Shown piece by piece: positions 14,201 through 46,911 of a DNA stretch of 64,000 nt. Within the stretch, counting starts at the first letter, position 1. Each line of letters starts with the position of its first letter. The DNA comes from Bispira polyomma (taxonomy: Eukaryota). The notes beneath the pieces were generated by a model that saw only the letters and a program-made list of their open reading frames with translations, had not been told where the DNA came from and ran no database searches. Location of the stretch: positions 57,164,001-57,228,000 of the forward strand of contig OZ287755.1 in the NCBI GenBank assembly GCA_965649765.1, given 5' to 3'. The translations under genes were made by a program, and so were the position numbers.

Positions 14201-15465
14201 TTGCAGGAGTAAGTATATTTAATACTATTTACATAAAATTTTAACATGTACATTACTGATAATATGGTCACTCCTGAATCTTGATACTTCTAGATATCTT
14301 AACTGTTCTTGCGTTAAAGTAACTGTTCTTGCGTTAAAATAAAAAATTAAACAACAAACTTATGTTAAATTTGAATATACATCCCTGCATTATTAACAAC
14401 ATAAAGGATTTGTACCAGTCAACATTAGAATTGTTGACAATTTATCAGTGACATATATTAGTCTTCAGCAATTTACTGTTAATAAATAGCTGATATAAAA
14501 GACGTACGTTGTATTATTAATTCGCTACAATTATTATGTTATTTTTTAAATTAAGCAATGACATCACAAGGCTCTTGCTTGTTTGAACTATTTGTAAGTA
14601 AGGTGAAACAAGATTTTATCTTAGTTAAAACAGTTTATAACTGAATGATTGACATAATCAGAAGTTCTAAAATTGCTGACACACCTGCTCTTATTATTTA
14701 ATCTATTTTAATTTATTTTAACTATACTATTATAATGTCATTAAATAGTATGTATGTTGTCTTTGGTGTAAATCTTACCTCCAAATATGAACCTATCCAG
14801 TTGAAGTTTAGGTTTCGTTTTGGGGTGAAGCTCCCTGGCTTTGAAGAAAACTGGTAACAGTAGCCTTCTACTCTCTACAACTTTGATAGGTAAATCATCC
14901 TGCATTGTAACTGCTATTTACACTAACTTAAGCTTTAATTTTATCACAGTTTCTTTCTGTCTCCAACTAAGAAATCTAACTAGGATCACTTCCTTCTGCA
15001 TATGTTTGCTTCATGTAGTGAGCTCTTTCTATATCATTCAGATTGAGAGAAACCTTTTCAAAGTTTTGAATCAACGTCTGTTCAATACTCTGGCCTGGTG
15101 AAATATTAATCCTCATCAATCTCAAGTTATTTTTTCTTGAATAAGTTTCTTACTTAATGATCTTATCCTTAAGCTTGCGATATTCCTCATTTACTTTTGT
15201 CATTTCATTTTTTAAATATTGTAATTCCCGGTCTCGTGCAGAAATTTTATTCTCAAAGTCTGATATTTTTTTCAGTTCATCCAGTGCATAAGTTAAGCTG
15301 TGTTCAATCTTTTTAAGCCTTTTTCTCACTGGCTTTGATTTTTCATCCAACATTTTTGAAAATGTGGCCAACATGTCACCTTGTTTTGATCTTGTATTCA
15401 TTTTCCTTGTATAATTTAGGTATAGTTGCAAAACAAAATAATCATACACATTCACAACATTCACA
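11215..15465 (-). mobile_element. L1/Tx1-type LINE (ORF1 without NADAR, ORF2 EN-RT); degenerate, internally deleted and 3'-truncated
   Basis: ORF1 coiled coil 15400-15150, then SRKNNL, VILVRF..QDDLP..KLQLDRFIFGGKIYTKDNIHTI* at ~14745. T-rich spacer. ORF2 SANCRGL, LQDTH, GDLN, SDH, then RT with QGDPISP and QFADD. Stops after ERPFIPINL. Confidence 0.92.
11606..13895 (-). pseudogene. ORF2 (APE endonuclease and reverse transcriptase) of the 11.2-15.5 kb LINE
   Basis: ORFs 12877-13605 (EN) and 11606-12859 (RT: KTPGIDG, NWRPLSML, LIDFEKAFD, FADD), separated by frameshifts. Confidence 0.92.
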
Positions 15466-18400
15466 AAAAACTGTTCTTGATGTCCATGCAGTTAACTGTG
15501 GGTGCTGTATTTTAATGTTTATTTAATTTCTGCAAAGAAAGACCAGAAATCTAAGTTGGAAATTCAAAAAATACATCATAAAAGAAAATAAATAAACTTA
15601 AACAAAAGCTGTAGCACATGATGTTTAGTATAATGTGATGACATTGGTGGATGTATATTTTATCACCCATCAGACACGTTTTCATAACAGGATGCATCAG
15701 TGAGATATAAAGAAAGGAAGTTACTGATATGCTAAATGACAATTTGCGGCTGATAAACCATTGTTTGTATTAGTTAAAGATCTTAAACTTCAACTTACAA
15801 GAATTTTAAAATATGTCCTTCTGTGTCTTTGAGCTAATGAATTTGGATAGTGAAAAAATATTCCCAGTAAAAATTTATAGTTCTATTTATCTTGTTAATA
15901 AAACTTGGCCAGCAGTGAATATTAATTGCAGTGAATTTTTTTTAAAACATTTACATGATTGCAATATCTCCCAGCTTAAGTTTTAGCTCATACACTATTT
16001 AAAATCTGACTATATATTCAGATTCCTAGCTGAATTGTAACATCTTTAGGTTATTGTCATTTATACCGTTATTTTTATATGTGGTGTTTGAGTTTAAGTT
16101 CTAGTTTAAGGGTTAAGTTGTTTTGTAAATACAGCCCCATATTAGAGCCACTTAGTCTGGTAGTTTGCTATTTTAATCACTGATGACTTGCCATTTTTAA
16201 TAAGATAATAGTACCCGTTATGATTAACTTTCTATGTAACTTAAAAAACATCAAGCCAAAAAATTCTATTTTTTTAATGACAAATGCATAAAATAAGTGT
16301 AAAAAGAAAATATTTATAATTTTTCTTGATGTTTTGTATTTATGTTTTAGTTATTTATGTAATAAAAATACTAGGGCGTTGCTGGTGTAAGGGAGACACT
16401 CCAAGCTGGTAGTAGACTTTCTGAAGGCAGTGCAGAACATTTGGACCTTGGTTGTGTGGACTTTCGTAATGCTCGTTACTCCCACCTTTGGAGTTGGGGG
16501 TTGATTCTCTGGTTACATCATGTATGGAAGCACATGAGCCACTACCCAGTTCTCCTTTCTCCCACCAGTAAACCACAAATCAATGTATAATACTCATATG
16601 TCGTGGAAAGTGACAGTTATTACATATATCTTGTGGGAGACACTTTTTGGTTGATGACATTAGCCTCAGCTTAGGGCCGCCATGTTGTATGACGTCTCTA
16701 AGATAAACCATTTAGGGAGTGTAGATTTATTCATAATATTTATAAAAACATATTTCTAGTTTTATCGTAGTTAATGTTATATTTGACTCATATTTATGAT
16801 TAATATATTTTTCCCATATAGGTATACTGATAGAAGTTTATCTCATAAGCAAAATGAAAGAATTAATGGCTGTAGAAAAACAATATTTTATGTTGAAAAT
16901 GCTAACATACCTTTTTTTACTTCTAGGATTATCCTGTCTAGTAACACGTCATAGCTGACCTAATTAGAAGGTCCAATCTCTATGCATAATGGTTACTTCT
17001 AAAACCTAAAGTGTCACTCGGAACCGGAATAGACCCTCAAAAAGTGTTTGTAACGCCTGGATGGTGAATTCTATCAAAATTCATGGAATATTAACTGAGC
17101 TATGTTAAAATTGTCCATGAATGCCCTGTTGGTACAATCTGCTTTCTTTTATATTTTTCGAAGTATTTTACAATAGAGGATAATTAAAATAGTTATAATA
17201 GACTTTAACCTCACTCTAACCTGCTTTTTAAAATGTTATTTTTGTTTTCTCCTAATTAATCATTGACTGCACTCAAGTTCTATAAAATCTTTTAATTATG
17301 CCACTATAATGTTTTATAAAATTAACCACAGGGCTACTAATTAGGTGCTATTAGGAGTGGGCCTATGTATTTATGTTAAGAAGCGTTTGATTACATAAAA
17401 GCACAATGAAACGTGACTTGAAATTCAAACCATGTGTACATAAAACACACAAACTGGAGGTAGTTTTGTAGCATAGAGTTCAAGGATTATACTTAACAAA
17501 TGGGTGTTGTATATCTTCAGCACGGAGCAGCTAATACGTTTATTTCACTGGTGGTTTTCTTTCACCACTCTTGTATCAAACAGTGGCTATTTCTTTTATC
17601 CTCTAAATGATGACATGAGTCACACTTTTAACACGACTGTAGGAAAGACTGTTGTAAACGTTATTCAATTAAAGAAGTCAAACTCTGTATTTAGCAAAGC
17701 AGTTTAGTGTAAATCTCATACCAGTGGAAACAATGATCTTACATTAGATAAAACCAATGGTATATGGCTATACTGAGTATTTGACAAGGATACAATTTAT
17801 ACTTCATAATAGTATCTGTTCTCCATCCTTTTATTACATGACAGAAAAAAACAACAATCTTCAATCATAAACATTGTATAATGATGTGCAGAACCTACTA
17901 GTCAAACTAAAGTTGATGACAGTTAAGATAATTAGTCAACTACAACTCTCGAGTAATATTTCAATAGGTAAATTTTTTTTTTTCAAGTTATAATTGTTAT
18001 CTTACAATACTAATACAACAAATCTCGTGTCCACGATTTTTGTTGGTTTTAAAGTGTGGCAATGTGTAGGAATGGTCAATACTCTATCAATACAAAGTGT
18101 CTGTCGCAGGTGGAATTTAAAAAGCTGATAGTGGGGTGGATGACTAGGTTTTTTTTGTCATGGGGTCCTATCCCCAGTTTTAGAAACCTCTGTCATGTGT
18201 CAGGTAATCTGTAGGTGGACTGTGAGTTACCAACACAGATTGACTGTACTTGTACAGTGAAGAAAGATTTACTGAGTACTTCAGGCAGATAAAATGAGAA
18301 TTTGGACTTGAACAAAAAAGGTAAAAGCAAAATAATACTGCACTGATACTTTCTTAGGGCAAAAACAGTAATTATCGAAACATAGACTGTTAAAGATATA

Positions 18401-20105
18401 GTCATTTAAAGGTATAGAAACTTGTGGCAGAATAGGTTACTTTGGGAACCTTGGTAAATGTTCATCATAAAACCACTTTAGTCCAGAGGTTGTTGGTGAT
18501 TGTACTTGTGTAGACAAGACAAAGTTAATTAGTATATGGAGATACTGTGGTGAATAGAAAATAATAATAATACAGTTTTAAGTAAGTAGCTTTATGAAAT
18601 TAGATATCTTAACAAATATGATAAAAAATCGTTTTCGTTCTTAACTGACATTTAACAAAGTCCCTAAGGATATTCTTATCTTCCATAACAACATATTTTT
18701 AAATTTTCTGTATTTCCTGTTTTACAATATCTGTGTAATACAGATCTCGAAGGAGCTCCAGTACCCAGGTTCCCTTATTTGAGAGTTTAAAATGTCAATA
18801 TTTCAATTGATTAAGCTGTGGTCTGACCTATTACCGAACTTGATTTTACAGATCAACCAATAATCCAGTCTTGATTGAACTGAACCTCCTCTACATTTTT
18901 CAAGTCGTATGAACTGCATTTCATCTTGATTTCGTTACCACCATATATTTACTATGTATAATTCATCCATTAGCCTTTGGAGCTGTTTCATATTTTGAGA
19001 AGTGGTTACTTTCATTCCGCCTTTCTTGTCTAATTTGTTATTCAACTGAGTATTGAAATCACCTCCTATAATCAAAATACTTGCACTATAATTTTCAAAA
19101 ATTTTCTGAAATCCTGTCATAAAGTTGATTTGATCTTTTGAACAATCCTTTGTATGTGCATAAATGTTCACTGGAATGAGTGGTGTGTTTTCTATTTCAC
19201 AGGAAACCAGTAGTATTCTGTCTTCAAGATCTTTTGCTTCTGTTATTAATTTAAAATCAAAGTTGAAGTTTTCTTGAATTAATAAAGCTACCCCCTTACT
19301 CTGAGTTGACCCATTTAAAAATAAAAGTTAACTTCATCTTCAAGAGAACTATGAGTTTCCTGTAAAAATGTAATACCTACGTGTGACCCTTTCAGCCAGA
19401 CAAAAAATGTTTTCCCTTTTCTTTTTATCCCGTAGCCCCCTGCAGATGAAGGAGTTAATAGTAACAATTTTATGAGCCATTTATACTTTATCCTAGCTAA
19501 CAAGATAAGACTTTCTATTTTCCTTATGTAGCAAGCTTCATACATCTGTTTAATCTCATTGAGAAATAACACAGAACAGTGCTGTACATCATACAAAAGT
19601 TTTAGGAATTTATACATTAGTTGATATACATAAAAAAAGACTCGGCAGATGCAGTATGATAACATAACAAGTTTGTAAATGTTGAATACACTAATATATT
19701 CTGACAAAAATTATGAATATGATTTTTAGCTAGATTCCTAGATGTTATCTGGATAGCTGGAGAGTTGGAAGTCTAAATAATAATGTTTAGACCTATAGTC
19801 TTTTCAGATCCTAGAGCAGCTTGGAATAGTATATTTTTACAATGGATCATAACAATTTATTTTTTATTAATTTACAACTCCTTAGTATGCTCTTTTATTT
19901 TTCTAGTAACACACTTTTCAAATATGGGGCTAGTATACATATTACTGCTGTCCAATATGTTGGGATCAGATAATGACAGACCACAGGAGAGGAATTTGTC
20001 TCTTTTGTTAACTTCAACGGCTTGCCAACAGCTTGTCTTTCAGTTACATTTGTGTAAACTTGAGATAAGAAGCCTTTTCCATCACTGATTTTACACGTTT
20101 TTCCC

Positions 20106-20720
20106 ACAGTGCCCCGGGGTACCAAAGATATGAATTAAGTTATATGGACATAACAATTAAAGTGTAACACCATAAAAGACTTGCGGTCAAATTTATTTAG
20201 GTCTACGGTTTTTTATATAGTTTCGGCCAATAAGGAGGGGGGCGTAAGGTCACCTTAAAGTCTGCTAGCTTGAACGAAGGTGTGTAAGGTCACCCTAAAC
20301 CAAAGAAGAATGAGGGTGCCGTATGGTCACCTTAACTTTAAGTTTAAGAATTGCTAAAGGTGCCATGAGGTCACCTTAAATTAATTACTAAGAGTTGAGG
20401 TCAGACAACGCTGACCTTAAATTAGTTTGAATGTTGAAATAAAGGTCAGACAATGCTGACCTTAAGTTTTAGTTAGGTAGGTCTCCTGTAAGGTGACCCT
20501 ACCTTGAGTTTGAGATAATTGTAGATTTTGAGGGTATACCATAAAGTATGTAATAAGTTCAAGCTAGACTAAGACTGTAAAAGAGTGCATTATGCACCCA
20601 GCAGTTAGGTTGACCTTATGCCCCCGGACAGTCATTGCTCTGCACTGTCCACATTTAGACTTTATTATGTATTAATACATATTTTATTATATTTACAGCT
20701 GAGACATAAAGAGCAGTCCA
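20106..20720 (-). repeat. B2 direct repeat of element 2 (copy of B1, 21530-22166)
   Basis: Near-identical ~615/637-bp copies; B1 has a small extra insertion near 21965. Confidence 0.95.
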
Positions 20721-21365
20721 GTCCACTAACAAATGTAGAGAATAAAATATTTAAAGAGTTCTTGACGTAAAGTTCATAAAATACTAGAAGAATAAAAGCA
20801 CATCAAGGAGACTTCCTGTTACTAGCGAGGTAACTGATTTTCGCAGTGACGCCGTCACTCCACTGCATCATAGTTCATGTTATAAGGCAAAGCCAGGTGA
20901 ATGGTATTAACGGCCATTCTCAAAGTTCACTAACCAGCAAAACTCACACTAGCTCGCAGCAACTGTCCTACATGCCGAGCAATACGGCCCCTTACCTAGT
21001 TACACAAATCTCACGTGAGAAGCTGGTACAAACATGAAAACATAAATTAAACACAGATTTTAGAGCAAGGCTCTTCCATCCACTCTAACATAGCAAGACA
21101 TCCAGATGTAAAAACCATCCCAGAACGACCAGCCCAGACGGTCTAAAGTTCTCAAGGTCGCAACACTGGCCTGCTGGTGAACGTTCGCAGAACGACATGC
21201 ATAACCGGCAAAGCCATCTGGGGAAAGGACGTCAAGCAACGAGGATCCAGATAACATTAGCAGGATCATCATGGAGATGGAAGCGCCAAGTGACAACATT
21301 GTACTATTCCTCCAGATAACTCCTGAAACTAAGAAAACATGATTAACAAGGGAGCGGAGGGTGGG

Positions 21366-21531
21366 TGTTACAAAATAATGTTCCGTGGTCGGCTGTAGTT
21401 TTCAAAAGGAAGTTATATTCAGACCGCACAGCTTTATATAGGGAGAGCCGCAGTCAGTGAAGCGTTTACAAAAACAAATAGACTGTTACCCCAGCACTGA
21501 AAGCACCAATGCTGGGGGCGCTGCCTTATAC
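21366..21531 (-). repeat. A2 direct repeat of element 2 (copy of A1, 26783-26948)
   Basis: 166-bp near-identical copies containing a CCCCAGC..GCTGGGG hairpin and a TATA-like TATATAAAG. Confidence 0.95.
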
Positions 21532-22184
21532 AGTGCCCCGGGGCACCAAAGATATGAATTAAGTTATATGGACTTAACAATTAAAGTGTAACACCATAAA
21601 AGACTTGCGGTCAAATTTATTTAGGTCTACGTTTTTTTATATACAGTTTCGGCCAATAAGGAGGGGGGTGTAAGGTCACCTCAAAGTCTGCTAGCTTGAA
21701 CGAAGGTGTTTAAGATCACCCTAAACCAAAGAAGAATGAGGGTGCCGTATGGTCACCTTAACTTTAAGTTTAAGAATTACTAAAGGTGCCATGAGGTCAC
21801 CTTAAATTAATTACTAAGAGTTGAGGTCAGACAACGCTGACCTTAAATTAGTTTGAATGTTGAAATAGAGGTCAGACAATGCTGACCTTAAGTTTTAGTT
21901 AGGTAGGTCTCCTGTAAGGTGACCCTACCTTGAGTTTGAGATAATTGTAGATTTTGAGGGTATGCCACTTGAGTTTCAGATGGCATACCATAAAGTATGT
22001 AATAAGTTCAAGCTAGACTAAGACTGTAAAAGAGTGCATTATGCACCCAGCAGTTAGGTTGACCTTATGCCCCCGGACAGTCATTGCTCTGCACTGTCCA
22101 CATTTAGTTATGGATTAATATATTATATTTTATTATATTTACAGCTCAGACATAAAGAGCAGTCCACCAAACCCAAGACCCTAG

Positions 22185-22521
22185 GAGTAGTGCTGAAAGG
22201 GCCGACCTGAAGGAGTCCGCAACCTGAGAGCCAGCCTGAGCCGAATCAGTTATATACCTCCACACACAATCTGATGTCCAGGTGCCATGTCGTTGAATGT
22301 CCTGTATGTTGACACTATTGTTAAAGGCAAATGTGGCACCCGAACGTCGGAAAGCATGGAAAGTAAGATTGGTCTGCCGGCAACCCGCAAGCTGCAAGAC
22401 ATTCTTCAGGTGACGCCTTACACAGGTGTCAGTCAACGCCTCCTGGCAGTTGAGGCAGCAAACGCAAAATGCAGCCGTTTGCAAGCCCGACCCGTCAGTA
22501 GTGATACCACTGGATGCATAC
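22185..22521 (-). pseudogene. Internally deleted tyrosine recombinase of element 2
   Basis: N-terminal MHPVVSLLTGRACKRLHFAFAASTAR is joined directly to LTDTCVRRHLK..HAFRRSGAT..HGTWTSDCVWRY. About 600 bp present in element 1 (~9630-10235) is missing. Confidence 0.9.
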
Positions 22522-22555
22522 CTGGAATCACACAAATATAGACATGTAATTAGTA

Positions 22556-24997
22556 TTATATTGTGGTATCAACTTGCAGCAGGGTGGCATCTGCTCGTAA
22601 CCATTTAACTGGGCCTGCCAATTCTACCAATAGTTGCTCATTGTTGGTGGTTTTATGCCAACGTGACAACAAATCTGCAATTTTGTTTTTTACACCCATA
22701 ATATGAATAACCCTGTTTCTATGTCAAATCTGCTGGCCCACATGTAAATATTACAGGTATAACAGGCCAAAACTGGATCCTGTGTCCGACCACTTCCTAA
22801 GACACTGACCACCGCCTGGTTGTCGCCCTTAAACAACACTTTTTTACCTTGCCAAACACTGGACCACAATTTGAGGGCTACAAGGATGTTAATCATCTCT
22901 AGTTCCGCAATATTATCCTGAGTCATATTCCAGGGAATATCTAGTTTATACATTTCATTCCCACAGATGCCCCCCATGCCAGTTAGACAGGCATCTAGTT
23001 CAACCTGAGCATGTACGGGTGTATACAAGAAAAAACTCACCCCGTGATACTGTTTAACAAATTTAGTGAACCAATTAAGGTCCTGCTTAAAGTCACTAGT
23101 GACACAAAAGGTTACTTTGCCATTGTTATTACGCAGTAATTGCAACATTCTGTTGAGAAATACTCTAGCATACTTGATGCATTTAGCTATATATAAGAGT
23201 GAACCTAGTAATGACTGCAATTCTTTCTTAGTACAGTGAGTTTTGTCTTGCCAGGATACACATTTTTCTCTGATTTCACACAATTTTTCATCAGGTATTG
23301 AGTTAGTAAATTTCTCATTGTCAATAAGGATGTCCAGACACACTACCTGTGTGCTGGGAGCCACCAAGTTTTTACTGCTAACGGTGAGACCGAGTTCATG
23401 CAGTAAAGCCTGCAACCAGTTATAGCTAGAGAAAATTTTACTGGGCAAATTAACCGCAAGAAAATCATCAATGTAACTGTGGATATTATCGTCAGAAAAT
23501 CTTTGAAAAATTGTTGATCCATTCTGGTAGCCGAAGGGTAGGCACTTATCTACATAAAACCCTTCCATTTTAAACCAAACAGATTAATGTCACTGGGTCA
23601 ATAGGGACGTGCCGGAATGCCCGACGTACGTCTACCTTATAGATATGGCAACCTCTGCCCAACTTAGTGACCTCACTGGTAATGTCATCAATGGAAGGAT
23701 ACGAGAGGAGAAATTCTGTATTTAAATAAGAAGTGGGAGAAACCCCCGCATTAACAGATTGGCCATGTGGCCAACTCAAGTCAACTATTACACGCCTATT
23801 GGCCGAGCTCGATTTATTCCGAGTCATCATTGGCGAGCAATGTAAGTTTCTGATTGGGGGGGTATTAAAAGGCCCTAAAATGGCACCAAATTGACATTCC
23901 TCATTTAAATACGTTTCGACATGTTCAGGAAAACAATTAGCTGAACTGTGGTTAGCATTCTGTGACTGACTTATGTTATCGCGACACACATCCAAAGGGA
24001 AGCCATATTTTACCAACAAGGGAAGCTGCCAGTCCCAGTACTGGTGGAGATATTTTTCCCACTTATCAGCATTCAGTTGTGACTCGACAGCCAACTGAAG
24101 TCCCTGAAAGTTATGTCTATCATCTTTCCGTAGTTTGTTGTGCATTTCGAAAACGCTAAGTCCATGGTTATTACCCACATCCCAGATTTGCACCCAAGTG
24201 TGGACAAAGGTGCAAAGCCATATTCAACTGCAGTTTGAGTTTTCCATTGAATGTGTGTAGCGTCTGAGCGAGCCTTAACCAACAACTCTCGTTTGTTGCG
24301 TTTTTGCTTCAACTCAAGGGAATATTTGTCCCCACAGTCCTTGGTGACACCCGAGTTACATTATTTACATTCGCTTTATGCGACGTAGAGCCAACCTTGG
24401 CTTTTTGCTTATTTACAATATTAACACTGTTTGTTTCCCCTTTTTCCTCCCCATTGCTGCCGGGTTCAACAATGGTTTGGCTGAGGGGGAGAAATCTGTT
24501 GTGTGATACAAGTTCACCCCCACCTCTAGTGTGGGTTTATATTGGGTGACCCTTTTATTCACACCAGTATGGGGGGCCCTTTGTCTCGACTCACTACATT
24601 CATCTTTGTTCCGCGTGGCCGAGACAAAGGGGGCGACCCCATCCATCCGAACGTTCACACCCTTAGTGCCTTCAATGCTGACATTTTTACATTTTTTGAT
24701 ACTCTTAATTGGTTTGAACTTCAGTACATTTTTGACAAATTTTGTAGTGCATTGAGGAACCTTGGTGTTACTTTCTGCGACTTGTTTAGCAATATTGTCA
24801 TTGTAAAACATTTTACTTCCTGCCGAAACAGCATTACTGTATGTACAGCAAGCCTTTGTGCCCCTATTATACATGAGCATTCTATTTACAACAGGTTTAC
24901 CAAACAAATGCTGTTCCTGAAATTTGGAATTATAAATAACTCTGTCCGAATATTTCAACGCAGTGGGCCTTAGTTTTTTAAACCCTTTTTGGTACAC
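22556..24997 (-). pseudogene. Pol (N-terminal extension, RT, RNase H) of element 2
   Basis: KVDVRRAFRHVP, LPFGYQNGSTIFQR, YIDD, LDACLTGMGG, DNQAVV, ADLLSRW; ends LQVDTTI* at 22556. Several frameshifts. Confidence 0.92.
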
Positions 24998-25997
24998 GTA
25001 CTGTTCTTATGGTTACCCCCGCAGGTCTCACACACGTTTGAAAAACGCGTTTCCTGTCTTATGACTAGTAGGGAACTTGCATGACCCATCCTGAAATAAT
25101 TTACAATTTGCATTTTGCTTGGCAAAGCCACTACCTTTACTAGTACCACGGCCACTACTGGTATGAACCACACTATTACTTGACGTGCCTCTGTGCATGG
25201 GCCCTTCTCAAACGGTCTAATTTTTCCACGTCAGACCACGAAAGCTTGTCCGTTTCCATGTGCGTCATGATAACTGCATGACAAGCCTTCGCCACCTCCC
25301 ACGAGAAGTCTTCCGCATCTTCCATGAGGTTGGACATATAATCCAGCATTGTTTCTCTAACCGAGTTACACTTCTCCTCCTGAATTATTCTAGTAAAACC
25401 GCATACCCACTGGGTCATGGACAGATCATCGTACGTGGGTCTAGCACGAAAACTACCAGTGAGCACATGGTTTTGGGGCCATTCAACAACACGTTTAATT
25501 ACTACGTCCACCCCGCCCCCCCCCCTTTGAGATTTGAGCTTACCCTGACTGGGAGCTTCATACGTTTTAGTTCTGCTAGCCGTGATTCGACCTGACTCTG
25601 AATTTGCGTGTTGTTTCGTAGGAAATCAACACTAGGTACCACATTCTGAACATTTTCTTCTATGATGGGTCAACTAATGCGGTTGTATTAGTTACAGAAT
25701 TATCACTAGAATTCAAATTACTGGCCTGTTTTTTGTTTCCACTGCTAATGTTGCCTCGGCGAGTTGCACATGCTGGTCCATTTTTTCCATCATCTGGCTC
25801 ATGGACTGGAGCTGAAGCAGAATTTGATTCGATACCGTGTTCAGCCCCACGTCCTGAGCCATACCAGTATCTGTGTGCTCCTCGCTTTGGTCATCATCAG
25901 CATCAGAAGTGGAAGAAACCTGAGATAGCAAACACCCAGCCCCAACCGGCCTAGCATGTTTCCCCAGACATTTAGAACAGTTTACAACCGCAGGCAT
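24970..25997 (-). pseudogene. Gag-like ORF1 of element 2
   Basis: CSKCLGKHARPVGAGC, GKLKSQRGG, WPQNHVL..RPTYDDL, RLRRAHAQRH, CETCGGNHKNSTC..LKN*. Confidence 0.88.
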
Positions 25998-26049
25998 GTC
26001 AGTATTTATGTAACAATTTGTAAGACAGAAAGGACACGATACTAGCTAG

Positions 26050-26780
26050 TTTAGTTTTTAAACTGGTTTAGAATTAACGTAAAACTGAACTTCGAATGTA
26101 ACAACATGTCACAAATACTAGAACTTCGTTTTGACCAGCATATTTTACAGTACTGAACTTCGAATCTAACAACATATGTTACAAATACTGTGCTATGATA
26201 GAATAATTCACAGCAGTTTAAACACCAAGGCAAAACTTCGAAACTATCAACATGTGTAGAATTTCGTTTTTTTCTACCAGCATATTTTACAATATTGAAC
26301 TTCGTATCTAACAACATATGTTACAAATACTGTTATACCAGCATGTTTTACAATACTGACTATCAAAACTATCAACACGTGTAGCACTTCGTTTCTACCG
26401 GTCTGTCTGATGTTATAAAATATAACTCTACTTTGAGTCTTGCGAGTACTGCTCCTGTTTGTGTCTGTGTATTCAAATTGATAACATATTTACTGATTTA
26501 GACACTCGAGTACACCTTATATATTGCAGGCTGGTTTTCTAGCATATAAAACGGCTCATAGTCACCCTTATAGGGACGAGTACACGGTATATTAAACACA
26601 TATTGCTGGCTGGTTTGTTAGCACATAAAAACGGCTCTCGAGTACCCCTTATAGGGACGAGTACACTATATTAATCAAATATTACACAACATATGTTACA
26701 AATGCTGTGCTATAATAGAATAAAAACAACGTGAAACTTCGAAACTATCAACACGTGTAGAACTTCGTTTCTACCGACAT
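26050..26780 (-). repeat. Imperfect internal repeats in the 5' leader of element 2
   Basis: Recurring AACATATGTTACAAATACTG and CTTCGAAACTATCAACACGTGTAG motifs, plus a ~80-bp duplication (CCCTTATAGGGACGAGTACAC at ~26565 and ~26646). Confidence 0.75.
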
Positions 26781-27210
26781 ATTGTTACAAAATAATGTTC
26801 CGTGGTCGGCTGTAGTTTTCAAAAGGAAGTTATATTCAGACCGCACAGCTTTGTATAGGGAGAGCCGCAGTCAGTGACGCGTTTACAAAAACAAATAGAC
26901 TGTTACCCCAGCACTGAAAGTACCAACGCTGGGGGCGCTGCCTTATACTTGGTGTCATCTAATCCACGAATACGGTAGGAGAGACCTTTTATTCTACCTG
27001 GGTTGGTGTTTCTCATCACAGCTCCTGCAGTTTCCACATCATCAAAGAACAGAGACTTCCGCTAAAGGTAGAACTGCTCTACACACAGATACCTTCTTTT
27101 TCCATCTAGAAAAGGGCTTGGATGGTGTTTACTTAAAACACTGTCTTGTCCAAAGAAGAAGGTTTAGTTGCACTGTGGATTGTATCTTTCCCCCTTCATT
27201 GTCCACCGCT

Positions 27211-27461
27211 GGGGCCGCGGTGGCCTAGTGGTTAGCAAGCATTGCGCTTCACAATCACTGGTCTCTCACCTCTGGGCGGCGTGAGTTCGAATCCCATCGA
27301 TGCCTATGTGGGAAAGGTGGTAGTTCCTTACTGTGGGCCACTTGTTTCTCTGCAGAACCTTGACCGACTGTATGCAGTGTTTCCTCCAGCGTTTCCAACT
27401 ACCTGTCCCAATATAACCTACTAAAAGGTACTAGAGTGGACATTAAATATCCAAATTCAAA
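27211..27461 (+). mobile_element. tRNA-derived SINE, family A, copy 2 (inserted in LINE ORF1 just upstream of NADAR)
   Basis: A and B boxes; 15-bp TSD TTCATTGTCCACCGC at 27195-27209 and 27462-27476. Confidence 0.95.
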
Positions 27462-28759
27462 TTCATTGTCCACCGCAAAAGTTCTGGTACAGTATCTAAA
27501 TCCTGTGCTTTGTATGAAGTTCCATCAAGGACAAGTTTATCCACTTCAGTGAACATTTCTGGATCTTTGAATCTATCTTTGCTGCTTTCAGGATTGAAGG
27601 CAACACTTTCCTGTTCTGCCTCAAAGCCTCTGTATAATCTTCCTGTACTTTGAAATTTCTGTCTTTTAGGTCCCAGCTTGATTTCCAGACCTTGTCTCCT
27701 TGTTAGGGAAGTGTTGAAAATGAACAATTACTGTTCTAGGATGGGTGGAAGCATGTGGTAACATGTGAGATAAAGTCCCTATCCTATGAACTCTTAAAAA
27801 CTGAATCTGAGAAGCATTTGCCATGTTTAACTTGTTCTGTCAAAATTCAGTAACTTTAGTCTCTATATCTTCCTTTGGTGATTCAGCAATACCATCAAAA
27901 AACAAATTGTCTTTTTTGCTGAAGGCATCTTAACTATTTATTTCTTCTTTCAGTTTGCTGATTGTCATATCTTGTTCTTTCTTTTTATGTTCAAAAGTTT
28001 TTTTTCAAGTTTGTTCACATTTTATTTCTTGTTTCACGACCTTAACAGATGTTGTTTCTTTTCTAATTGCACTTAGTTCATTAATGATACATGAGAATGC
28101 CTGCATGAACCATTCTGGAGCTAAATCTTGTATTTGTTTTACCAGTTCATTTCTATCACCTTGTAATGCCTCATCCTTGCTAAGTGAAGGTTTGTATCCA
28201 TTTTTTTCAAACCTAAATTATCACTAAGTGGTGAGACCTAAGGTTCCTCAGCTCCTCTTTTACTCATATCCAGTCTATTTGGCCTATAACTATCCTTTAA
28301 AATATCATTAAAACACACAGGAATAGTTAGTTTATTTTTAGTGCAATCCACAAAACTTTGACATAAAATTACAACCAGCAATCAGTCATAATATCTATTC
28401 ATTCAGTAAACACACTTAATGACCCCTAGGTTTATTATCTGATGTTCATCCCTTTTTTACATCACATAAGGAAATTAACAATCTTAAAGTTGAACTATAA
28501 ACTTATACAATAATTTACAGAGTCTAATAGTCAAACCAAAATTGAGATCGCTTAACTTAACCAGTCAATTAGAACTCTCCAGTAAGTTTTAATTTGTATC
28601 TGGATTACTAACATGACAAGGCTTGTGTCCTCGATTCTTGTTTGTTTTAAAAGTGTGGTAAAATATATGAGCAATGTGTAGGAATGGTCAAAACCCCTTT
28701 AGGGCTCCATACTAATACAAAGCAATTAACTCTGTGTCTGACCCAAGTAGAATTTAAAT

Positions 28760-28932
28760 TTATTTAGGTTTTACATCACTTTCAACAGTTTACGTCATAT
28801 CAGGTTGGCCGGATTCGATGGTGGAAGCAACCGCCATACCTGACAAACTTTCCCACATAAAAGAACAGCCAAACCAACATTTGTGAGAGACCTATGATTA
28901 TGAAGCTAACACGTTTAACCACTAGGCTACCA
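28760..28932 (-). mobile_element. Degenerate tRNA-derived SINE of a second family (partial paralog ~37770-37850)
   Basis: Reverse strand reads GGTAGCCTAGTGGTTAAA..TGTGGGAAAGTTTGTCAGG..GATATGACGTAAACTGTTGAAAGTGATGTAAAACCTAAATAAA; resembles 54500-54700. Confidence 0.6.
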
Positions 28933-40887: not shown

Positions 40888-42171
40888 AGTGCAGTCCCAG
40901 CAAGGACCTCTAAACAGGATTACAACCTTGTCTCCCCCGTATCTCAAAAACTCTCATTATTAGATCTGCGTGCAGCTTTAAAGCAAGAACTAGTCCCTCT
41001 GCGTTCAGAAATTGATGGTATTAAACTGAAACTTGATATAGTAGAAAAAATATTAAGCGGTGACATTGAGGATGTAAAAAATTGCATTCTTAAGGTTACT
41101 GAAAGACTTGATTCTGTGAATGATTCCTTCAAAGCTAAGATAGAATTTCTTGAAGAAGAAAATAAGGATCTCCACATGAAACAGATACAGGCTACCACTA
41201 ACATAAATGAACTGACAAATAGACTGATAAATCTTGAGTACCACATGAGGCGAGATAACTTAAAATTTTTAAATATAAATCTTCCCAACTCAACACCCCA
41301 TCATCCAGAAGACTGTGAGTCAATCATCCTTCACATATGCCAAGACCATGGAATTGTCCTAGAAAGAAGGGACATTGTCAGAGCTCATCGTGTTGGTCCT
41401 ACTGCTAACAACAAGAGGGCTATCATAGTGAAGCTTAACCATTTCAAGGATAAGATGAAAATTCTCAAATTAAAAAGTGCTTTTCGTGAAAATGGAATAC
41501 AAATAGTTGAGGACTATCCACCAGAAGTTGTTAGTCGCCGAAAGACCTTCAGATCAGTCCTTCAAACTGCCTTTGCGTCCAATGGAAAATATAAGGCAAA
41601 GTTAGAATTTGACAAGCTTGTTTTAAATGGAAGACATTACAGTGTTGATGAACTTGACAAACTCCCCGTAGACCTTCAGCCGCAATATTTAGCAACTGTT
41701 TCCAAAAACAACATCACTGCCTTTTTCACAGACCAGTCACCACGGTCAAATCATCACCCTCGCAAATTTGAAGTTCAAAATCAACAATTCTCATCAGTAG
41801 AACAGTTTTTCATGTATCAGAAGGCCTCTCACTTTCATGATGACAGCACAGCTAATGACATACTGCGTAGCTCAGACCCAAAAAGAGCGAAGTTCCTTGG
41901 AAAACATGTCAACAATTTTGACATGTCCACATGGCTGCCGGTATGTGACAAATACATGAAAACTGGCCTCACAGCAAAATTTGACCAAAATCCTCAGCTA
42001 GCAAAGTTTCTGAAGGACACCGGATCTACACATATTGTGGAAGCCAATCCATACGACCTATATTGGGGTGCAGGCCTTTCCTTGACCAATGAAGACATTT
42101 GGCACATCCCAAGGTGGAAAGGTAAAAATACCCTTGGTTTACTGTTAGAAGAACTACGTAAAAATATGTGA
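40888..42171 (+). CDS. L1 ORF1p (coiled coil, RRM, CTD) fused to a C-terminal NADAR/YbiA-like domain (~41716-42168)
   Basis: Frame open from ~40888. LEYHMRRDNLKF, IVRAHRVG, AIIVKL and EDYPPEV are L1 ORF1p motifs. These are followed by FF....SNHHP, SVEQFFMYQKA, PKRAKFLGKHV, AKFDQNPQL, VEANPYDLYWGAG and GKNTLGLLLEELR (NADAR motifs). Start codon not resolved. Confidence 0.9.
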   Translation, partial: SAVPARTSKQDYNLVSPVSQKLSLLDLRAALKQELVPLRSEIDGIKLKLDIVEKILSGDIEDVKNCILKVTERLDSVNDSFKAKIEFLEEENKDLHMKQIQATTNINELTNRLINLEYHMRRDNLKFLNINLPNSTPHHPEDCESIILHICQDHGIVLERRDIVRAHRVGPTANNKRAIIVKLNHFKDKMKILKLKSAFRENGIQIVEDYPPEVVSRRKTFRSVLQTAFASNGKYKAKLEFDKLVLNGRHYSVDELDKLPVDLQPQYLATVSKNNITAFFTDQSPRSNHHPRKFEVQNQQFSSVEQFFMYQKASHFHDDSTANDILRSSDPKRAKFLGKHVNNFDMSTWLPVCDKYMKTGLTAKFDQNPQLAKFLKDTGSTHIVEANPYDLYWGAGLSLTNEDIWHIPRWKGKNTLGLLLEELRKNM

Positions 42172-42179
42172 GTGCTAAT

Positions 42180-43020
42180 TTTATTAGCTAGTGCTGTTAT
42201 AAACATTATACTGGTAATATAGTGCTAATTCAAACATTTTACTGACAATATAGTGCTAGTACAAACTTTTTACTGACTATGTAGTGCTTCTATAAACATT
42301 TCTTTGACTAATGTTGCGCAAATATTTTATTGTCTATTGCTTACCTAAAACCCCTTGTACTTGTAAACTTATTAAGTGGACAAAATATGTTCTTTTGTTG
42401 ATTATCTATTACTCATAGCCTTTGTGCATACTACAAACAAAATTAATTCATAGTATTCTTATGGAGCAGTTATGTTTTTTTACTCAATGAATTGTGTATA
42501 TATTTTACAATAATTATGATTATTGACACTAATTTTTTAGTTACTTTTTTGGACCAACAATTTATATGAGATGACATTTATCTGTGATGTTAATCAGTAA
42601 TAGAATACTGCATGTTTTGGGGGTTTTCTAAAAACTACTATAAGCTTAAGTAGATATTACTTAATGAAGTATATACTTCAACAGAGTATTGTAACCTTAT
42701 TCAGTAATTGTTTAGCTAACATAGCTGATCCTTGATCCCAGCTATTCTATAGGTAGCTCAACCAGTATGACCTGCTATATGTTTCATTTATGTTTGCTTT
42801 TTTTGTACAGTTTTGTTCTAGTTTGTTTAAAACCTACTTCTTATTCTCCATTTGTATGTATATTCTTTGATATATTTTCTCTGTTTAAAAGGAGTTACAA
42901 CATGTTCTTCATTTCAATACCTCACATTATCAGTAATAATGTTCAGTTCTTCATTTCAGTAACTCACACTAGCAGTAATAATGTTCAGTTCTTCATTTCA
43001 ATACCCCACAATTGCAGTGG
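42180..43020 (+). repeat. Short tandem repeats in the inter-ORF spacer
   Basis: ~30-bp unit TAGTGCT..AAACATT..ACTG about 4 times (42185-42310); ~42-bp unit GTTCTTCATTTCA..CACA..CAGTAATAATGTTCA about 3 times (42900-43020). Confidence 0.7.
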
Positions 43021-43082
43021 TAATATTAATAATTCTTTCTTTACAGAAAGCAGATATGGAGCTCTTACGTGTTTAAGTAAAA

Positions 43083-46000
43083 ATGGTATTGGATAACATA
43101 ATTAGGGTATCATCAGCAAATGTTCAGGGTATCAGGAATAAAGAAAAGAGGCATGATGTAATAAGTTACTTAATGAACAGTAATACCAATATCCTCTGTC
43201 TACAGGATACACATTTGTTACCTTCAGACAAAAAATATCTCAAGTCATCATTTGACTTTGAATTTTTTTTGCATGGTACTAAGACCAATTCTCGTGGGGT
43301 TTTAGTAGCTTTTAAAAACAATTTTGAATATAAAATAAAACATGTAGAAAATGACACAGATGGAAATCTGCTTTTAATAGACATACAACTGAACAGTATG
43401 TCAGTAAGATTAATAAATATTTATGCACCAAATAATGATAGCCCTGAATTCTTTCATAAAATAAGAGACTATGTTGTAGATTCAACTGAAACTTATATTT
43501 TGCTATGTGGTGATTTTAATTTGGTCCTGAACCCAATATTAGACAGCTATAACTATGTTAACATCAATAACCCACAATCAAGGACAGCCATATTAGAGCT
43601 AATGTCAACTCACAATTTAAATGATGCTTTTAGACAATTAAACCCAGTCACTAAAAGATATACTTGGCGTCGACGTAACCCGATTAAACAAGCACGATTA
43701 GATTATTTCATTGTTTTAAATACCCTAACTGATATAGTTCACAGTTGTGTTATCAAACCTGGTTATAGGAGTGACCACTCTGTTCTAGATATTAACATTA
43801 TTATTGATAAATTTGAAAGAGGTAAGGGAATATGGCGTCTCAATTGTAGTCACTTGAAAAATTCTAATTACATTGATACAATAAATGGAGCAATTAATGA
43901 AGTGAAAATTCAGTATGCATTACCAATATACAATATAGAAAACATTAGCCTTGTAAATGACTCCGATATTCAATTTACTATTCCTGATAGTACTTTTTTA
44001 GAGATGTTACTTTTGAAAATTAGAGGTGAAACTATCAAGTTTTCTTCTCAGTTAAAGAAGAAGAATAACCTTAATGAAAACAAATTACAGCAAGAAATAG
44101 AATTTATTGAAAATAACAATGACCCCCAACAACATGATGTGCTCACAGGAAAGAAACATGAATTGGAAACTTTGAGAGAATTGAAAAATTCCGGTCACTT
44201 AATAAGGTCAAGAGTGCAAAATTTATTGTACAATGAAAAACCAACAAGATATTTTTGCACCTTAGAGAAAAAAAACTATGTTGACAAAACGATTAGAAAA
44301 CTTACTGCAGCTAATGGAGAGTTGATAACCTCTCAGAAAGAGATATTAAATCATGTGAAAGAGTTTTATGCCAACGTTTATCGCAACAGAGATAATTCAT
44401 TACAAGAAATAGATCTTGATAACCTGATTGCAAATAACCATGCAAATATTTTGACAAAAACTGAATCTGATTCAATAAATGGTTTGGTTACAATAGAAGA
44501 ATTAGGTAAAGCCCTTAAACAGATGAAAAACAATAACAATATAATGTTTTACAATATAATGGTTTACCAGCAGACTTCTATAAGGTTTTCTGGTGTAAAT
44601 TAAAATTCTTTATCTTACGTGCAATAAATGAGAGCTATGACAAGGAAATTATGCCTTTTAGTCTGCGACAAGTTGTAATAAATTGCATTCCAAAAGGAGA
44701 CAAATCCAGAGATCAATTAAAAAACTGGCGCCCAATATCATTGACAAGTGTTTGTATAAATTAGCAACTAGTGTTATAGCTTCAAGAATAAAATGAGTTT
44801 TGTCTAAGCTGATATCAACAACACAAACCGGTTTTATTGAGGGTAGATTTATTGGAGAAACAACTCGCCTAGTATATGATATAATGGAATACACAGAAAT
44901 TAATAATATAGATGGGTTATTGATGCTAATTGACTTTGAAAAGGCTTTTGATTCGATCTCGTGGAAATTTATGTATTTGGTTTTAAAAAAATTTGGTTTT
45001 GGTTACGATTTAATAAAATGGGTTAAACTATTTAACACTGAAATTAAAGCCTTTGTTCTTCAAGTAGGAGTACTTTTCAAATTTTTCAACATAGAAAGAG
45101 GCTGCAAACAAGGTGATCCTTTGGCACCTTATCTGTTCATACTATGTAGTCAAGTATTATATTTATTAATCCAACACGATTCTAAGATTAAAGGTATTAC
45201 CATAAAAGATCAAGAATTTAAAATAACCCAATTTGCTGATGATACCGCCTTAATGTTGGATGGTTCTGAGAGTTCCTTATCTGCTACTTTAAATGTTTTA
45301 GAAATATTTGGTACAATGTCAGGTTTAAAGATGAACACAACAAAATCAAAGATGATATGGATTGGAAGGAAAAAAACATTGTAGAGATAAACTGCATTCA
45401 AAATTTTATTTTGAGTGGAATTGTGAAACGTTTTCATTGCTTGGACTAGAGTTTGACATTGATTTAGGAAAGATACCTGACATTAATTATGCTAAAGCCC
45501 TAGCCAAGATTAAAAAATTGATATCAGCCTGGAATAAACGGACACTAACACCTCTTGGAAAAGTAACAGTTATAAAAACATTGATTTTATCAAAATTGGA
45601 TCATTTATTTATGGCTATCTCTCTACCAAATAGGGATTTCTATAAACACATAAATGCACTCCTTTATAACTTCATATGAGAAGGAAAACCAGAGAAAATA
45701 TCTCGTGTACAGATGAATCAAAAATATGTTGACGGTGGATTAAAAATGATAAATATTGAACATTTTGTAAAGGCCCTAAAGAGTACATGGATTAGAAGAC
45801 TGATTATATCACAAAATTCACAGTGGTCCAAACTTTTGAGTTGATACATTTGACCATTGCAAAGATTACCCATTTTGGTCATTACTGGTTGAAAATATTG
45901 ACATCAAGGACTCAAAATCATTTTTGGCAGGACATTTTCCAAATTGTTTCTTCTCATTCTCTAGACAGTACTTGTCAAAGTGCTCAGCATATCTTGCGAA

Positions 46001-46911
46001 CTCCAATATGGTACAATGAGACTATTAGTAAAACAAATCTCTTTAAGTCGAGATGGTATCAAAAAGGAATTACAGTTGTAGGAGACCTTGTACAGAATGG
46101 CAGTATGTTAAGTAAAGAGATGTTGGAGTCATTTTATAACCTTCCTGTCATTAATTTTATTGAATACTACCAAGTAAAAGCCGATCTGCTTCAGTTTATA
46201 AAGAAATCAAACGTGAATTTATCTTCTGATCTTGAAAGACCCTTTATTCCAGTACATTTATCAATACTGCTTAAAAGTAAAAAGGGTTGCAAAGATATAT
46301 ATAACGCTATGAATAAATCTTACGTAGAAAGCAAATACAAATTAAAATGGAATAAAGATGTAAATATGAATATTGATACTACCACTTGGAAAAGAATATT
46401 TTATATATGTTTCAACACTGTAAAAGATAATAAATTCATTTGGTATCAATATAAAATTTTGCATCGCATACTTGGAACAAGAAAACCTTTATTCAAAATG
46501 TCTATTTCTGAATCAGAGTCATGCAGATTGTGCAACTCTAACACTGAAACCCTGCTTCATTTGTTCACGCAATGCCAGCATGTAAAAAAAATATGGAAAG
46601 ACTTACAACTATGGATAAAAATGTCATTAAACACTGATCTGAATATTACCTCAGAAGAAATATTATTCGGTTACTTATTGAAAGATGCAATGTTCCTTCC
46701 AATTAATATCATATTCTTTGTAACCAAATACTATATCTACTCCTGTACCAGAAATAGCACATCTTTAAACTTTGATATCTTAAGAAAAAAACTTACATAT
46801 ATGTATGAATGTGAATATTATCTATATAAAGAGAACAATCAAGAAAATTTGTTTAATGAGGTATGGTCACGATTTTCTAATATGTTTGACTACAATCCAG
46901 TAAGTGATTAA
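43083..46911 (+). pseudogene. L1 ORF2: APE endonuclease, RT and C-terminal CCHC knuckle (disrupted)
   Basis: SANVQG, LQDTH, GDFN, SDH; LIDFEKAFD, QGDPL, QFADD; CRLC...ETLLHLFTQC. Frameshifts or stops near 44550, 44750-44795, 45370, 45677 and 45830. Confidence 0.95.

What the first reader, a model, noticed from the sequence alone, without database searches (positions are those of the whole stretch)
19895..27163. A second, hidden and highly divergent ORF1p-NADAR, split by the Ngaro insertion
Not visible in the ORF track. Removing 20108-26948 restores a minus-strand frame: TFFFGQDSVLSKHHPSPFLDGKRRYLCVEQFYL*RKSLFFDDVETAGAVMRNTNPGRIKGLSYRIRGLDDTK|WEKRVKSVMEKASYLKFTQ..LKDKLLA, then after a frameshift VEVNKRDKFLSCGLSLSDPNILD. 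This aligns motif by motif with the NADAR at 41716. It follows DKLVLDGTSYKAQDLDTVP (compare DKLVLNGRHYSVDELDKLP) and precedes an L1 endonuclease at ~19480. The two domains are very divergent, so the fusion looks like an old lineage-level feature rather than a one-off capture. The usual D..WG motif reads DKFLSCG here, from decay or a variant active site.
Basis: seen in the sequence. Interest (0 to 1): 0.8.

Follow-up and report, generated by a model that had tools for sequence, protein, structure and literature searches.

The report
Dead LINE copy with split NADAR
This is a decayed copy of a jumping gene (an L1/Tx1-type LINE) whose first protein carries an ADP-ribose-removing NADAR enzyme domain; two later mobile-element insertions cut it apart, and the copy itself is an ordinary fossil of a very abundant family type already noted in oysters.

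Summary
On the minus strand, 28267-27477, 27209-26949 and 20107-19942 are co-linear pieces of one LINE ORF1 that ends in a NADAR domain. A 252-bp SINE with a 15-bp target duplication and a 6,841-bp tyrosine-recombinase retroelement without one interrupt it. Two paralogs elsewhere in the genome carry both flanks directly abutting, so they act as empty sites. The copy is dead: it has stops, frameshifts, a deletion of about the last 20 NADAR codons, and no reverse transcriptase after the endonuclease.

The odd DKFLSCG motif is not decay. D-x-[FY]-F-S-C-G is conserved in every scored member of a second ORF1-NADAR clade. That clade includes a family with a 436-aa open frame at 13 places in this genome and about 25 proteins from other assemblies. 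The catalytic Glu/Lys/Glu positions are kept; the Trp that contacts pyrophosphate is Phe.

The fusion is old and abundant (over 2,000 NADAR candidates in this genome). Strict co-divergence fails: ORF1-NADAR and endonuclease trees conflict, which argues for module reassortment.

A 2025 paper already notes NADAR in ORF1 of Crassostrea gigas Tx1 LINEs. This scan noted the fusion at least six more times in this genome. Verdict: a new member of a known kind, of modest interest.

The parts
27477..28267 (-). ORF1 body of the decayed LINE (N-terminus, coiled coil, RRM/CTD-like part). The ATG is at 28267. It holds many stops and frameshifts and ends in ...DKLVLDGTSYKAQDLDTVPELLRWTM
   Evidence: Translation. 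tblastn with L051/L053 ORF1 is co-linear, E 3e-36 and 5e-48. The ORF1 N-part tree places both pieces in clade II with 98/99 support.
27210..27461 (+). 252-bp SINE inserted in ORF1 in antisense orientation. It is flanked by the 15-bp target-site duplication gcggtggacaatgaa (27476-27462 and 27209-27195, read on the minus strand).
   Evidence: Sequence. The C4 paralog lacks it and has one copy of the duplicated site. At least 980 candidates in the genome; all 39 other scored full-length copies are 98-99% identical.
26949..27209 (-). ORF1 linker plus the N-terminal half of NADAR (domain from 27163). A TAA lies just before the domain and a TAG at 27064-27062 between the catalytic Glu and Lys. The invariant Asn of the LSN motif is Lys.
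   Evidence: The C4 paralog is 92.7% identical over 261 nt.
20108..26948 (-). 6,841-bp tyrosine-recombinase retroelement (DIRS order, Ngaro-like) inserted between a Lys and a Trp codon, with no target duplication. Split direct repeats: A1 26948-26783, B1 22166-21532, A2 21531-21366, B2 20720-20108.
   Evidence: Repeats. Weak Pfam hits below the curated cut-offs: Phage_integrase E 3e-4, RNase-H-like E 6e-3. YIDD RT motif, and 55-66% amino-acid identity, co-linear, with a second such element at 5992-10485. Empty sites in paralogs.
19942..20107 (-). C-terminal part of NADAR: WEKRVKSVMEKASYLKFTQM*LKDKLLA, then a frameshift (13-14 nt shorter than the paralogs), then VEVNKRDKFLSCGLSLSDPNILDSS. It is cut short by a deletion that removed about the last 20 codons.
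   Evidence: Paralog ORFs continue ...KWEGENNLGHILTSLRHKLSQ*. The C4/C7 alignments stop at 19942.
18615..19940 (-). Inter-ORF spacer (19940-19481) and the ORF2 APE endonuclease (ATG 19480, to about 18615), broken by frameshifts. No reverse transcriptase follows.
   Evidence: tblastn with the EN of the external relative L068: E 4e-49, 47.6% identity. RT queries find nothing here. The same EN type follows NADAR in the C4, C7 and C6 paralogs.
15714..18614 (-). Non-coding tail attached to the EN. It is shared only with a local duplicate at 33412-37607 and holds a roughly 380-bp high-copy repeat at 16668-17051.
   Evidence: blastn at 85-86% over 4.2 kb. The genome search finds the full stretch only at these two places.
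40888..46911 (+). Comparison element: a LINE with an intact ORF1-NADAR (open frame 40888-42171, canonical D..WG) and an ORF2 (EN, RT, zf-RVT) read in several open frames between 43083 and 46911.
   Evidence: Pfam NADAR E 1.8e-38, Exo_endo_phos, RVT_1, zf-RVT. Open frame from 40888.

Best explanation
The region holds one old, dead copy of an L1/Tx1-type LINE on the minus strand. Its ORF1 protein is a coiled-coil/RRM/CTD ORF1p with a C-terminal NADAR domain.

After insertion the copy was hit by several events, all shown in the sequence:
- a young SINE with a 15-bp target duplication, hence LINE-mediated;
- a tyrosine-recombinase (Ngaro-like) retroelement that integrated between two codons of the NADAR domain without a target duplication;
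- point stops and small indels;
- a deletion that removed the end of NADAR and part of the spacer;
- loss or replacement of everything after the endonuclease.

The copy belongs to a low-copy old family inside a large second clade of ORF1-NADAR LINEs. In that clade the D..WG.G motif is replaced by a conserved D-x-[FY]-F-S-C-G.

The following steps are inferred, not shown. In live relatives the NADAR is a working ADP-ribosyl hydrolase tethered to the RNA-coating ORF1p trimer. The catalytic Glu, Lys and Glu are kept, and it is the best-conserved part of ORF1. It probably removes base-linked ADP-ribose (as known NADARs do for guanine-N2) from the element's RNA or cDNA. The Trp-to-Phe change at the pyrophosphate contact suggests altered ligand handling. 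ORF1-NADAR has stayed together as a unit but has been reassorted with two different ORF2 lineages.
For: Identity and continuity of the pieces: co-linear tblastn to the intact L051 ORF1; profile hits in order; an alignment with no missing residue at the K|W join; both NADAR halves fall in one 7-row subclade with 94/85 support.

Empty sites: on C4, 46396357-46396615 abuts 46396177-46396356, and the same holds on C7. C4 is co-linear from the 5' region to the EN start and lacks both insertions.

Nature of the insertions.

The closest intact relative is a true ORF1p-NADAR. Pfam NADAR scores E 2.8e-33. The AF2 model has pLDDT 86. It matches NADAR 8BAU (E 1e-10, TMt 0.78) and the human L1 ORF1p trimer 2YKO/2YKP (E 2e-7, TMt 0.60-0.70).

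Variant motif: it is conserved in intact copies in this genome and in about 25 external proteins. It aligns to W133 of 8BAU. The residue roles come from PMC11543638.

Constraint: among clade II pairs, NADAR is 52% identical, against 46% for the RRM/CTD part and 32% for the N-terminus.

Abundance: 2,147 PF08719 candidates, with all 150 scored above 136 bits; 13 places with a 436-aa open frame.

Reassortment: AU tests give p 1.5e-11 on NADAR and p 0.0086 on EN. The ORF1 N-part tree agrees with the NADAR tree.
Against: Pfam does not call any single piece of the broken copy (best E 0.11), so the assignment rests on relatives and custom profiles.

No RT is present in this copy. The junction at 19940 coincides with the edge of a local duplication, so the 3' part has been rearranged and its history is not resolved.

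Enzymatic activity of any LINE-borne NADAR is untested. Trp-to-Phe and Gly-to-Ser next to the active site could weaken ADP-ribose binding.

A search for Scabin-like guanine ADP-ribosyltransferases in this genome found nothing, although the control was silent too.

The EN-tree test rests on partial sequences, and L024 has a long branch.
Confidence: 0.9

Rival explanations
1. The NADAR-like strings are chance similarity in decayed DNA; there is no second NADAR.
For: Pfam gives no significant hit to any single piece.
Against: Four co-linear profile hits are the only ones among 2,753 six-frame pieces apart from the intact ORF1. tblastn scores E 2.8e-32 to an intact relative. Paralogs have an open 73-80 aa NADAR C-half.
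Confidence: 0.01
2. The two flanks of the 6.8-kb insertion belong to unrelated elements that happen to lie side by side.
For: The region is a nest of repeats with at least one local duplication.
Against: Paralogs on C4 and C7 have the two flanks abutting to the base. The alignment continues K|W with no gap. Both halves fall in the same subclade.
Confidence: 0.02
3. The endonuclease at 19480 is a separate 5'-truncated element and not the ORF2 of the ORF1-NADAR element, so the locus is a chimera.
For: The break at 19942/19940 coincides with the 5' edge of the duplicate at 37607. EN type B differs from the EN of the nearest intact NADAR relatives L051 and L067.
Against: The same NADAR, spacer and EN type B order holds in paralogs C4, C7 and C6 and in L050. 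It also holds in external elements whose NADAR groups with this one, namely P0006 (L070/L071) and P0002 (L073).
Confidence: 0.05
4. In clade II the NADAR is no longer a hydrolase but a binding or structural module (for example an ADP-ribose or nucleotide reader), because the D..WG motif is changed.
For: W133 hydrogen-bonds the ADP-ribose pyrophosphate in 8BAU (PMC11543638). It is Phe in all clade II sequences, and the next Gly is Ser.
Against: The residues shown by mutagenesis to matter (Glu, Lys at +7, and the last-strand Glu) are invariant or nearly invariant in the 24-sequence alignment (E309, K316, E388). A clade I family also has Phe at this position yet scores highest against Pfam NADAR (DKIFGIG). 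The fold is predicted with high confidence.
Confidence: 0.2

Closest known systems
Tx1-type LINEs of Crassostrea gigas with a YbiA-family NADAR domain in ORF1 (Repbase entries, noted in PMC12477816, Genome Biol 2025)
   Same: A LINE ORF1 protein with a C-terminal YbiA-family NADAR domain, in an invertebrate genome, with many families.
   Different: I could not compare sequences with Repbase. That paper gives one paragraph and a supplementary alignment. It does not describe two clades, the F-S-C-G variant, copy numbers, or the ORF1/ORF2 conflict. The copy studied here is a fossil.
Human LINE-1 ORF1p (PDB 2YKO, 2YKP, 2YKQ)
   Same: The predicted structure of the closest intact relative matches coiled coil, RRM and CTD over about 190 columns (E 2e-7, TMt 0.60-0.70).
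   Different: About 20% identity. Pfam's L1 ORF1 family is not detected. Human ORF1p has no enzyme domain.
Phytophthora nicotianae NADAR (PDB 8BAU) and E. coli YbiA (2B3W)
   Same: Same fold (E 1e-10, TMt 0.78) and sequence match (E 1.6e-15). The Glu43/Lys50/Glu125/Asp130 equivalents are present.
   Different: Trp133 is Phe, and the following Gly-x is Ser-Cys in clade II. The domain is fused to a retrotransposon RNA-binding protein rather than standing alone or paired with a toxin.
Esterase (SGNH) domains in ORF1 of CR1/L2-type LINEs (from my own knowledge, not checked here)
   Same: Another case of an enzyme domain carried by a LINE ORF1 protein.
   Different: Different fold, chemistry and LINE clade.
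Ngaro elements of the DIRS order (tyrosine-recombinase retrotransposons)
   Same: The insertion has gag-like, RT (YIDD), RNase H and tyrosine-recombinase ORFs, split direct repeats A1...B1A2...B2, and no target duplication.
   Different: A 645-bp stretch separates A2 from B2. Ngaro was not told apart from PAT-like elements.

Membership tests
NADAR (Pfam PF08719, YbiA family) | Significant match to the family profile | tested here: inconclusive
   Single pieces of the broken copy: best Pfam E 0.11. Custom NADAR profiles: four co-linear hits at E 2e-11 to 2e-4. The closest intact relative L051 scores Pfam E 2.8e-33. The joined sequence was not searched.
NADAR (Pfam PF08719, YbiA family) | Catalytic Glu and Lys seven residues later, and the Glu of the last strand that defines the YbiA family (PMC11543638, PMC11125620) | tested here: met
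   CVEQFYL*RK and VEVN in the window copy. E309, K316 and E388 are invariant or nearly so in relatives. In this copy a stop codon lies between the Glu and the Lys.
NADAR (Pfam PF08719, YbiA family) | The D..W motif contacting the ADP-ribose pyrophosphate (D130, W133 in 8BAU) | tested here: not met
   Asp is kept; Trp is Phe in all clade II sequences (Leu-shifted DKFLSCG in this copy). This is a conserved variant, not decay.
NADAR (Pfam PF08719, YbiA family) | YbiA-like fold | tested here: met
   Tested on the closest intact relative only: 8BAU E 1.1e-10, TMt 0.78; 2B3W E 3.6e-8.
L1-type ORF1p | Coiled coil, RRM and C-terminal domain upstream of ORF2 | tested here: met
   The model of L051 ORF1 matches the human ORF1p trimer 2YKO/2YKP/2YKQ at E 2e-7 to 4e-6. 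The broken copy's ORF1 pieces align to it. The Pfam and PDB sequence searches of this part are blank.
Autonomous LINE (non-LTR retrotransposon) | APE endonuclease and reverse transcriptase in ORF2 | tested here: not met
   For this copy, EN is present at 19480-18615 (E 4e-49) but no RT follows. Relatives (L069, L070, L073 and the window element at 43083) have EN plus RVT_1.
Ngaro / DIRS-order retroelement (the insertion) | RT/RNase H plus tyrosine recombinase, split direct repeats, no target-site duplication | tested here: met
   (weak Pfam hits below cut-off). The 1-nt ambiguity at the ends means no TSD.
SINE (the 252-bp insertion) | Short, high-copy, with target-site duplication; tRNA-related head | tested here: inconclusive
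   At least 980 candidates at 98-99% identity and a 15-bp TSD are met. ARAGORN and Rfam find no tRNA. The box-B-like GTTCGAATCC was seen only by eye.

The most novel reading that the evidence does not exclude
The F-S-C-G clade is an active, specialised de-ADP-ribosylase that LINEs carry on ORF1p to strip base-linked ADP-ribose from their RNA or nascent cDNA. This would counter host DNA/RNA ADP-ribosyltransferases such as the CARP-1 family, which the literature places mainly in bivalves (PMC12945103). Under this reading, the repeated reassortment of ORF1-NADAR with different ORF2 lineages reflects selection for this counter-defence.
Probability: 0.15. Interest if true: 0.8.

Novelty: new member of a known kind. 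Interest (0 to 1): 0.33.

Why it matters
The copy itself is a fossil and matters only as annotation. The class it belongs to is more interesting. These are thousands of LINE copies whose RNA-binding protein carries an enzyme known to reverse guanine (and cytosine) ADP-ribosylation of nucleic acids, in animals whose relatives encode DNA ADP-ribosylating toxins. No role for NADAR in animals has been established (PMC11125620).

First, there is a second clade with a conserved change at the pyrophosphate-contacting Trp. Second, NADAR is the most conserved part of ORF1. Third, ORF1-NADAR behaves as one module that has changed ORF2 partners.

Tried and rejected
- Pfam on the separate pieces gave nothing significant.
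- Rfam and ARAGORN on 19000-29000 gave nothing, so the tRNA origin of the SINE is unproven.
- Pfam and PDB sequence searches of the ORF1 N-part were blank; the fold search was needed instead.
Full-length RT trees for families of this genome could therefore not be made; EN N-termini within the 1.5-kb flanks and external full-length elements were used instead.
- A search of the genome for Scabin-like ARTs (PF22596) found no match, and the control genomes were silent, so this says nothing.
- A NADAR was sought in the neighbouring LINE at 15437-11215 and none was found.
- The joined step (splicing the three pieces into one sequence) was left out; pieces were searched by reference or as separate rows.
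- No family consensus was built; natural intact copies were used.
- The big representative-protein search and complex prediction were not needed.

Full report
**What is there**

ORF1 starts at ATG 28267 and runs, through many stops and frameshifts, to ...VDKLVLDGTSYKAQDLDTVPELLRWTM at 27477.

A 252-bp insert (27461-27210) then follows, flanked by the 15-bp direct repeat gcggtggacaatgaa (27476-27462 and 27209-27195). After it the frame resumes as RWTMKGERYNPQCN*TFFFGQDSVLSKHH... and runs to ...RIRGLDDTK at 26949. A 6,841-bp block (26948-20108) follows. After the block the reading continues as WEKRVKSVMEKASYLKFTQM*LKDKLLA. After a frameshift it reads VEVNKRDKFLSCGLSLSDPNILDSS, ending at 19944. 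Every search used the pieces by reference or as separate rows, and the joined step is left out.

**Is it more than chance**

The window's intact ORF1 (Pfam NADAR E 1.8e-38) hits 27169-26957 by tblastn at E 9.7e-9 with 35% identity. Pfam on the short pieces alone is not significant (best E 0.11).

The genome (G000, 1.04 Gb) holds 2,147 first-look candidates for PF08719. All 150 that were scored exceed 136 bits, and many lie in open frames of 400-460 aa. A search with the open C-terminal half of a paralog found 1,352 candidates, among them 13 places with a 436-aa open frame. That 436-aa protein (L051) has Pfam NADAR at E 2.8e-33. Its tblastn against the window is co-linear from 28267 to 19944 across both insertions: the N half of NADAR scores E 2.8e-32 at 51% identity, and the C half scores E 1.2e-9.

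Profiles built from intact NADAR domains were run against all 2,753 six-frame pieces of the window. Apart from the intact ORF1, they hit only four pieces of this copy. The hits fall in profile order 5-37, 39-79, 75-95 and 109-148. In the multiple alignment the join falls between adjacent columns (K|W), with nothing missing.

**The flanks were once contiguous**

On contig C4, 46396357-46396615 matches the upstream flank at 93% identity and abuts 46396177-46396356, which matches the downstream flank at 82%. The same abutment occurs on C7. The C4 paralog is co-linear with the window copy from the 5' region through ORF1, NADAR and spacer to the start of ORF2. It lacks the 252-bp insert and has a single copy of the 15-bp site.

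**The insertions**

The 252-bp insert is a full-length member of a young SINE family. There are at least 980 candidates, and all 39 other scored full-length copies are 98-99% identical.

The 6.8-kb block has these features:
- split direct repeats: A1 26948-26783, B1 22166-21532, A2 21531-21366, B2 20720-20108;
- no target duplication, with only a 1-nt ambiguity at the ends;
- a YIDD reverse transcriptase motif;
- weak RNase H and tyrosine-recombinase Pfam hits, below cut-off;
- ORFs that are 55-66% identical to, and co-linear with, a second such element at 5992-10485.

It is a DIRS-order element of the Ngaro type. I did not separate Ngaro from PAT-like elements.

**State of the copy**

The copy is dead. 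Its lesions are:
- the two insertions;
- a TAA just before the domain;
- a TAG between the catalytic Glu and Lys;
- a TAA after KFTQM;
- a frameshift, with the stretch 13-14 nt shorter than in the paralogs;
- Lys in place of the invariant Asn of the LSN motif;
- a deletion after 19942.

The paralogs continue ...KWEGENNLGHILTSLRHKLSQ*, so the deletion removed about the last 20 codons and at least 294 nt of spacer.

ORF2 starts at 19480, and its APE endonuclease is recognisable to about 18615 (E 4e-49 to an external relative). No reverse transcriptase follows. The stretch 15714-19940 is 85-86% identical to 33412-37607. Its inner part occurs nowhere else in the genome, so the two are a local duplication. 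Why the edge of that duplication coincides with the deletion junction at 19940 is unexplained.

**What the family is**

The AlphaFold2 model of the closest intact relative has pLDDT 86. It shows a long helix, an RRM-like domain, a small C-terminal domain and a NADAR domain. Foldseek matches it to NADAR 8BAU (E 1.1e-10, TMt 0.78) and to the human LINE-1 ORF1p trimer (2YKO and relatives, E 2e-7, TMt 0.60-0.70). It is therefore a true L1-type ORF1p with an added enzyme domain.

The NADAR tree has two deep clades (100/100). Clade I has the canonical D..WG and holds the window's intact element. Clade II holds both halves of the broken domain, which sit in one small subclade.

Every clade II sequence in which the motif could be read carries D-x-[FY]-F-S-C-G or a one-residue variant. 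This includes the intact multi-copy families here and about 25 proteins from other assemblies.

Aligned to 8BAU, the changed residues are W133 (to Phe), the next Gly (to Ser) and the residue after it (to Cys). In that structure W133 and D130 contact the pyrophosphate. E43, K50 and E125 are the catalytic or essential residues (PMC11543638), and those three are kept. Among clade II pairs, NADAR is the best-conserved part of ORF1: 52% identity, against 46% for the RRM/CTD part and 32% for the N-terminus. This argues for selection on the domain.

**Co-divergence**

The ORF1 N-part tree agrees with the NADAR tree, so the fusion has been stable within ORF1.

The endonuclease tree does not agree. It splits 100/100 into type A (LQDTH) and type B (FLQETH). 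Elements with clade II NADAR fall on both sides. Type B holds this family, L050, and the external P0006, P0002 and P0005 elements. Type A holds L051, L067, and the P0008 and P0003 elements. One clade I family (L024) has type B.

AU tests reject the constrained trees in both directions. The EN data reject clade II elements as one group (p 0.012 on 83 columns; p 0.0086 on 243 columns). The NADAR data reject type B elements as one group (p 1.5e-11). The simplest reading is that whole ORF1-NADAR modules have changed ORF2 partners at least twice. The caveats are that the EN sequences are partial, L024 has a long branch, and the groups were named after I had seen a first tree.

**Known or new**

PMC12477816 (2025) states that ORF1 proteins of several Crassostrea gigas Tx1 LINE families in Repbase appear to carry YbiA-family NADAR domains. 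No other paper in the library links a NADAR domain with ORF1.

ESM Atlas neighbours of the intact relative are 415-489-aa NADAR proteins recorded from annelids. Related full-length elements sit on megabase contigs of other assemblies. This scan's own first readers noted the fusion six more times in this genome.

The fusion is therefore a lineage-level feature, and one already in print. This copy is a new member of a known kind.

**Function**

Function remains inferred. Known NADARs reverse guanine-N2 ADP-ribosylation and, per PMC12945103, cytosine ADP-ribosylation. That paper places CARP-1-type DNA ADP-ribosyltransferases mainly in bivalves. A search of this genome for Scabin-like domains was blank and had no working control.

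Noticed in passing
window 11215-15437 (-): Another decayed LINE. Its ORF1 ends at the ...LDRFIFGGKIYTKDNI stretch, and an AT-rich spacer follows with no NADAR. Yet its endonuclease and its ORF1 body are sister to a family (L003) that does carry NADAR. The domain was either lost in this copy or the family lacks it.
   Followed up: partly
window 15714-19940 and 33412-37607: A local duplication at 85-90% identity, holding the spacer, the endonuclease and 2.9 kb of non-coding tail. Its 5' edge (19940 / 37607) coincides with the deletion junction that truncates the NADAR. This is unexplained.
   Followed up: partly
window 16668-17051: A repeat of about 380 bp with at least 1,307 candidates in the genome at 78-82% identity, sitting inside the tail shared by the two duplicates.
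   Followed up: no
window 5992-10485 (+): A second tyrosine-recombinase retroelement. Its gag-like, RT/RNase H and recombinase ORFs are 40-66% identical (55-66% for all but the first gag-like ORF) to those of the one that splits the NADAR.
   Followed up: partly
loci L051, L056-L063 (G000) and table: A clade II ORF1-NADAR family with a 436-aa open frame at 13 of 150 scored places and 97-98% identical endonuclease starts. It looks recently active.
   Followed up: partly
L004-L015, L022 (G000): A clade I family (446-aa ORF1) has D-K-I-F-G-I-G, that is Phe instead of Trp but Gly kept, and gives the highest Pfam NADAR scores. The Trp-to-Phe change has therefore arisen in both clades.
   Followed up: no
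C4:46393619-46398115 (L044 + L032), positions 3514-3765 of the reverse complement: The C4 paralog carries a copy of the same SINE family (90% identical) at a different site, in its inter-ORF spacer, plus a duplicated 100-nt spacer unit.
   Followed up: no
window 40888-42171 (+): The intact ORF1 is open from 40888 (427 codons stop to stop) and aligns to a 442-aa relative from residue 21. The ORF list's GTG start at 41116 therefore understates it.
   Followed up: partly
window 28433-29372 and 37866-38402: Old fragments (64-75% identical) of the region 17810-18629 lie just upstream of the broken copy's ORF1 and of the duplicate. This points to further nested or rearranged pieces of the same sequence.
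   Followed up: no
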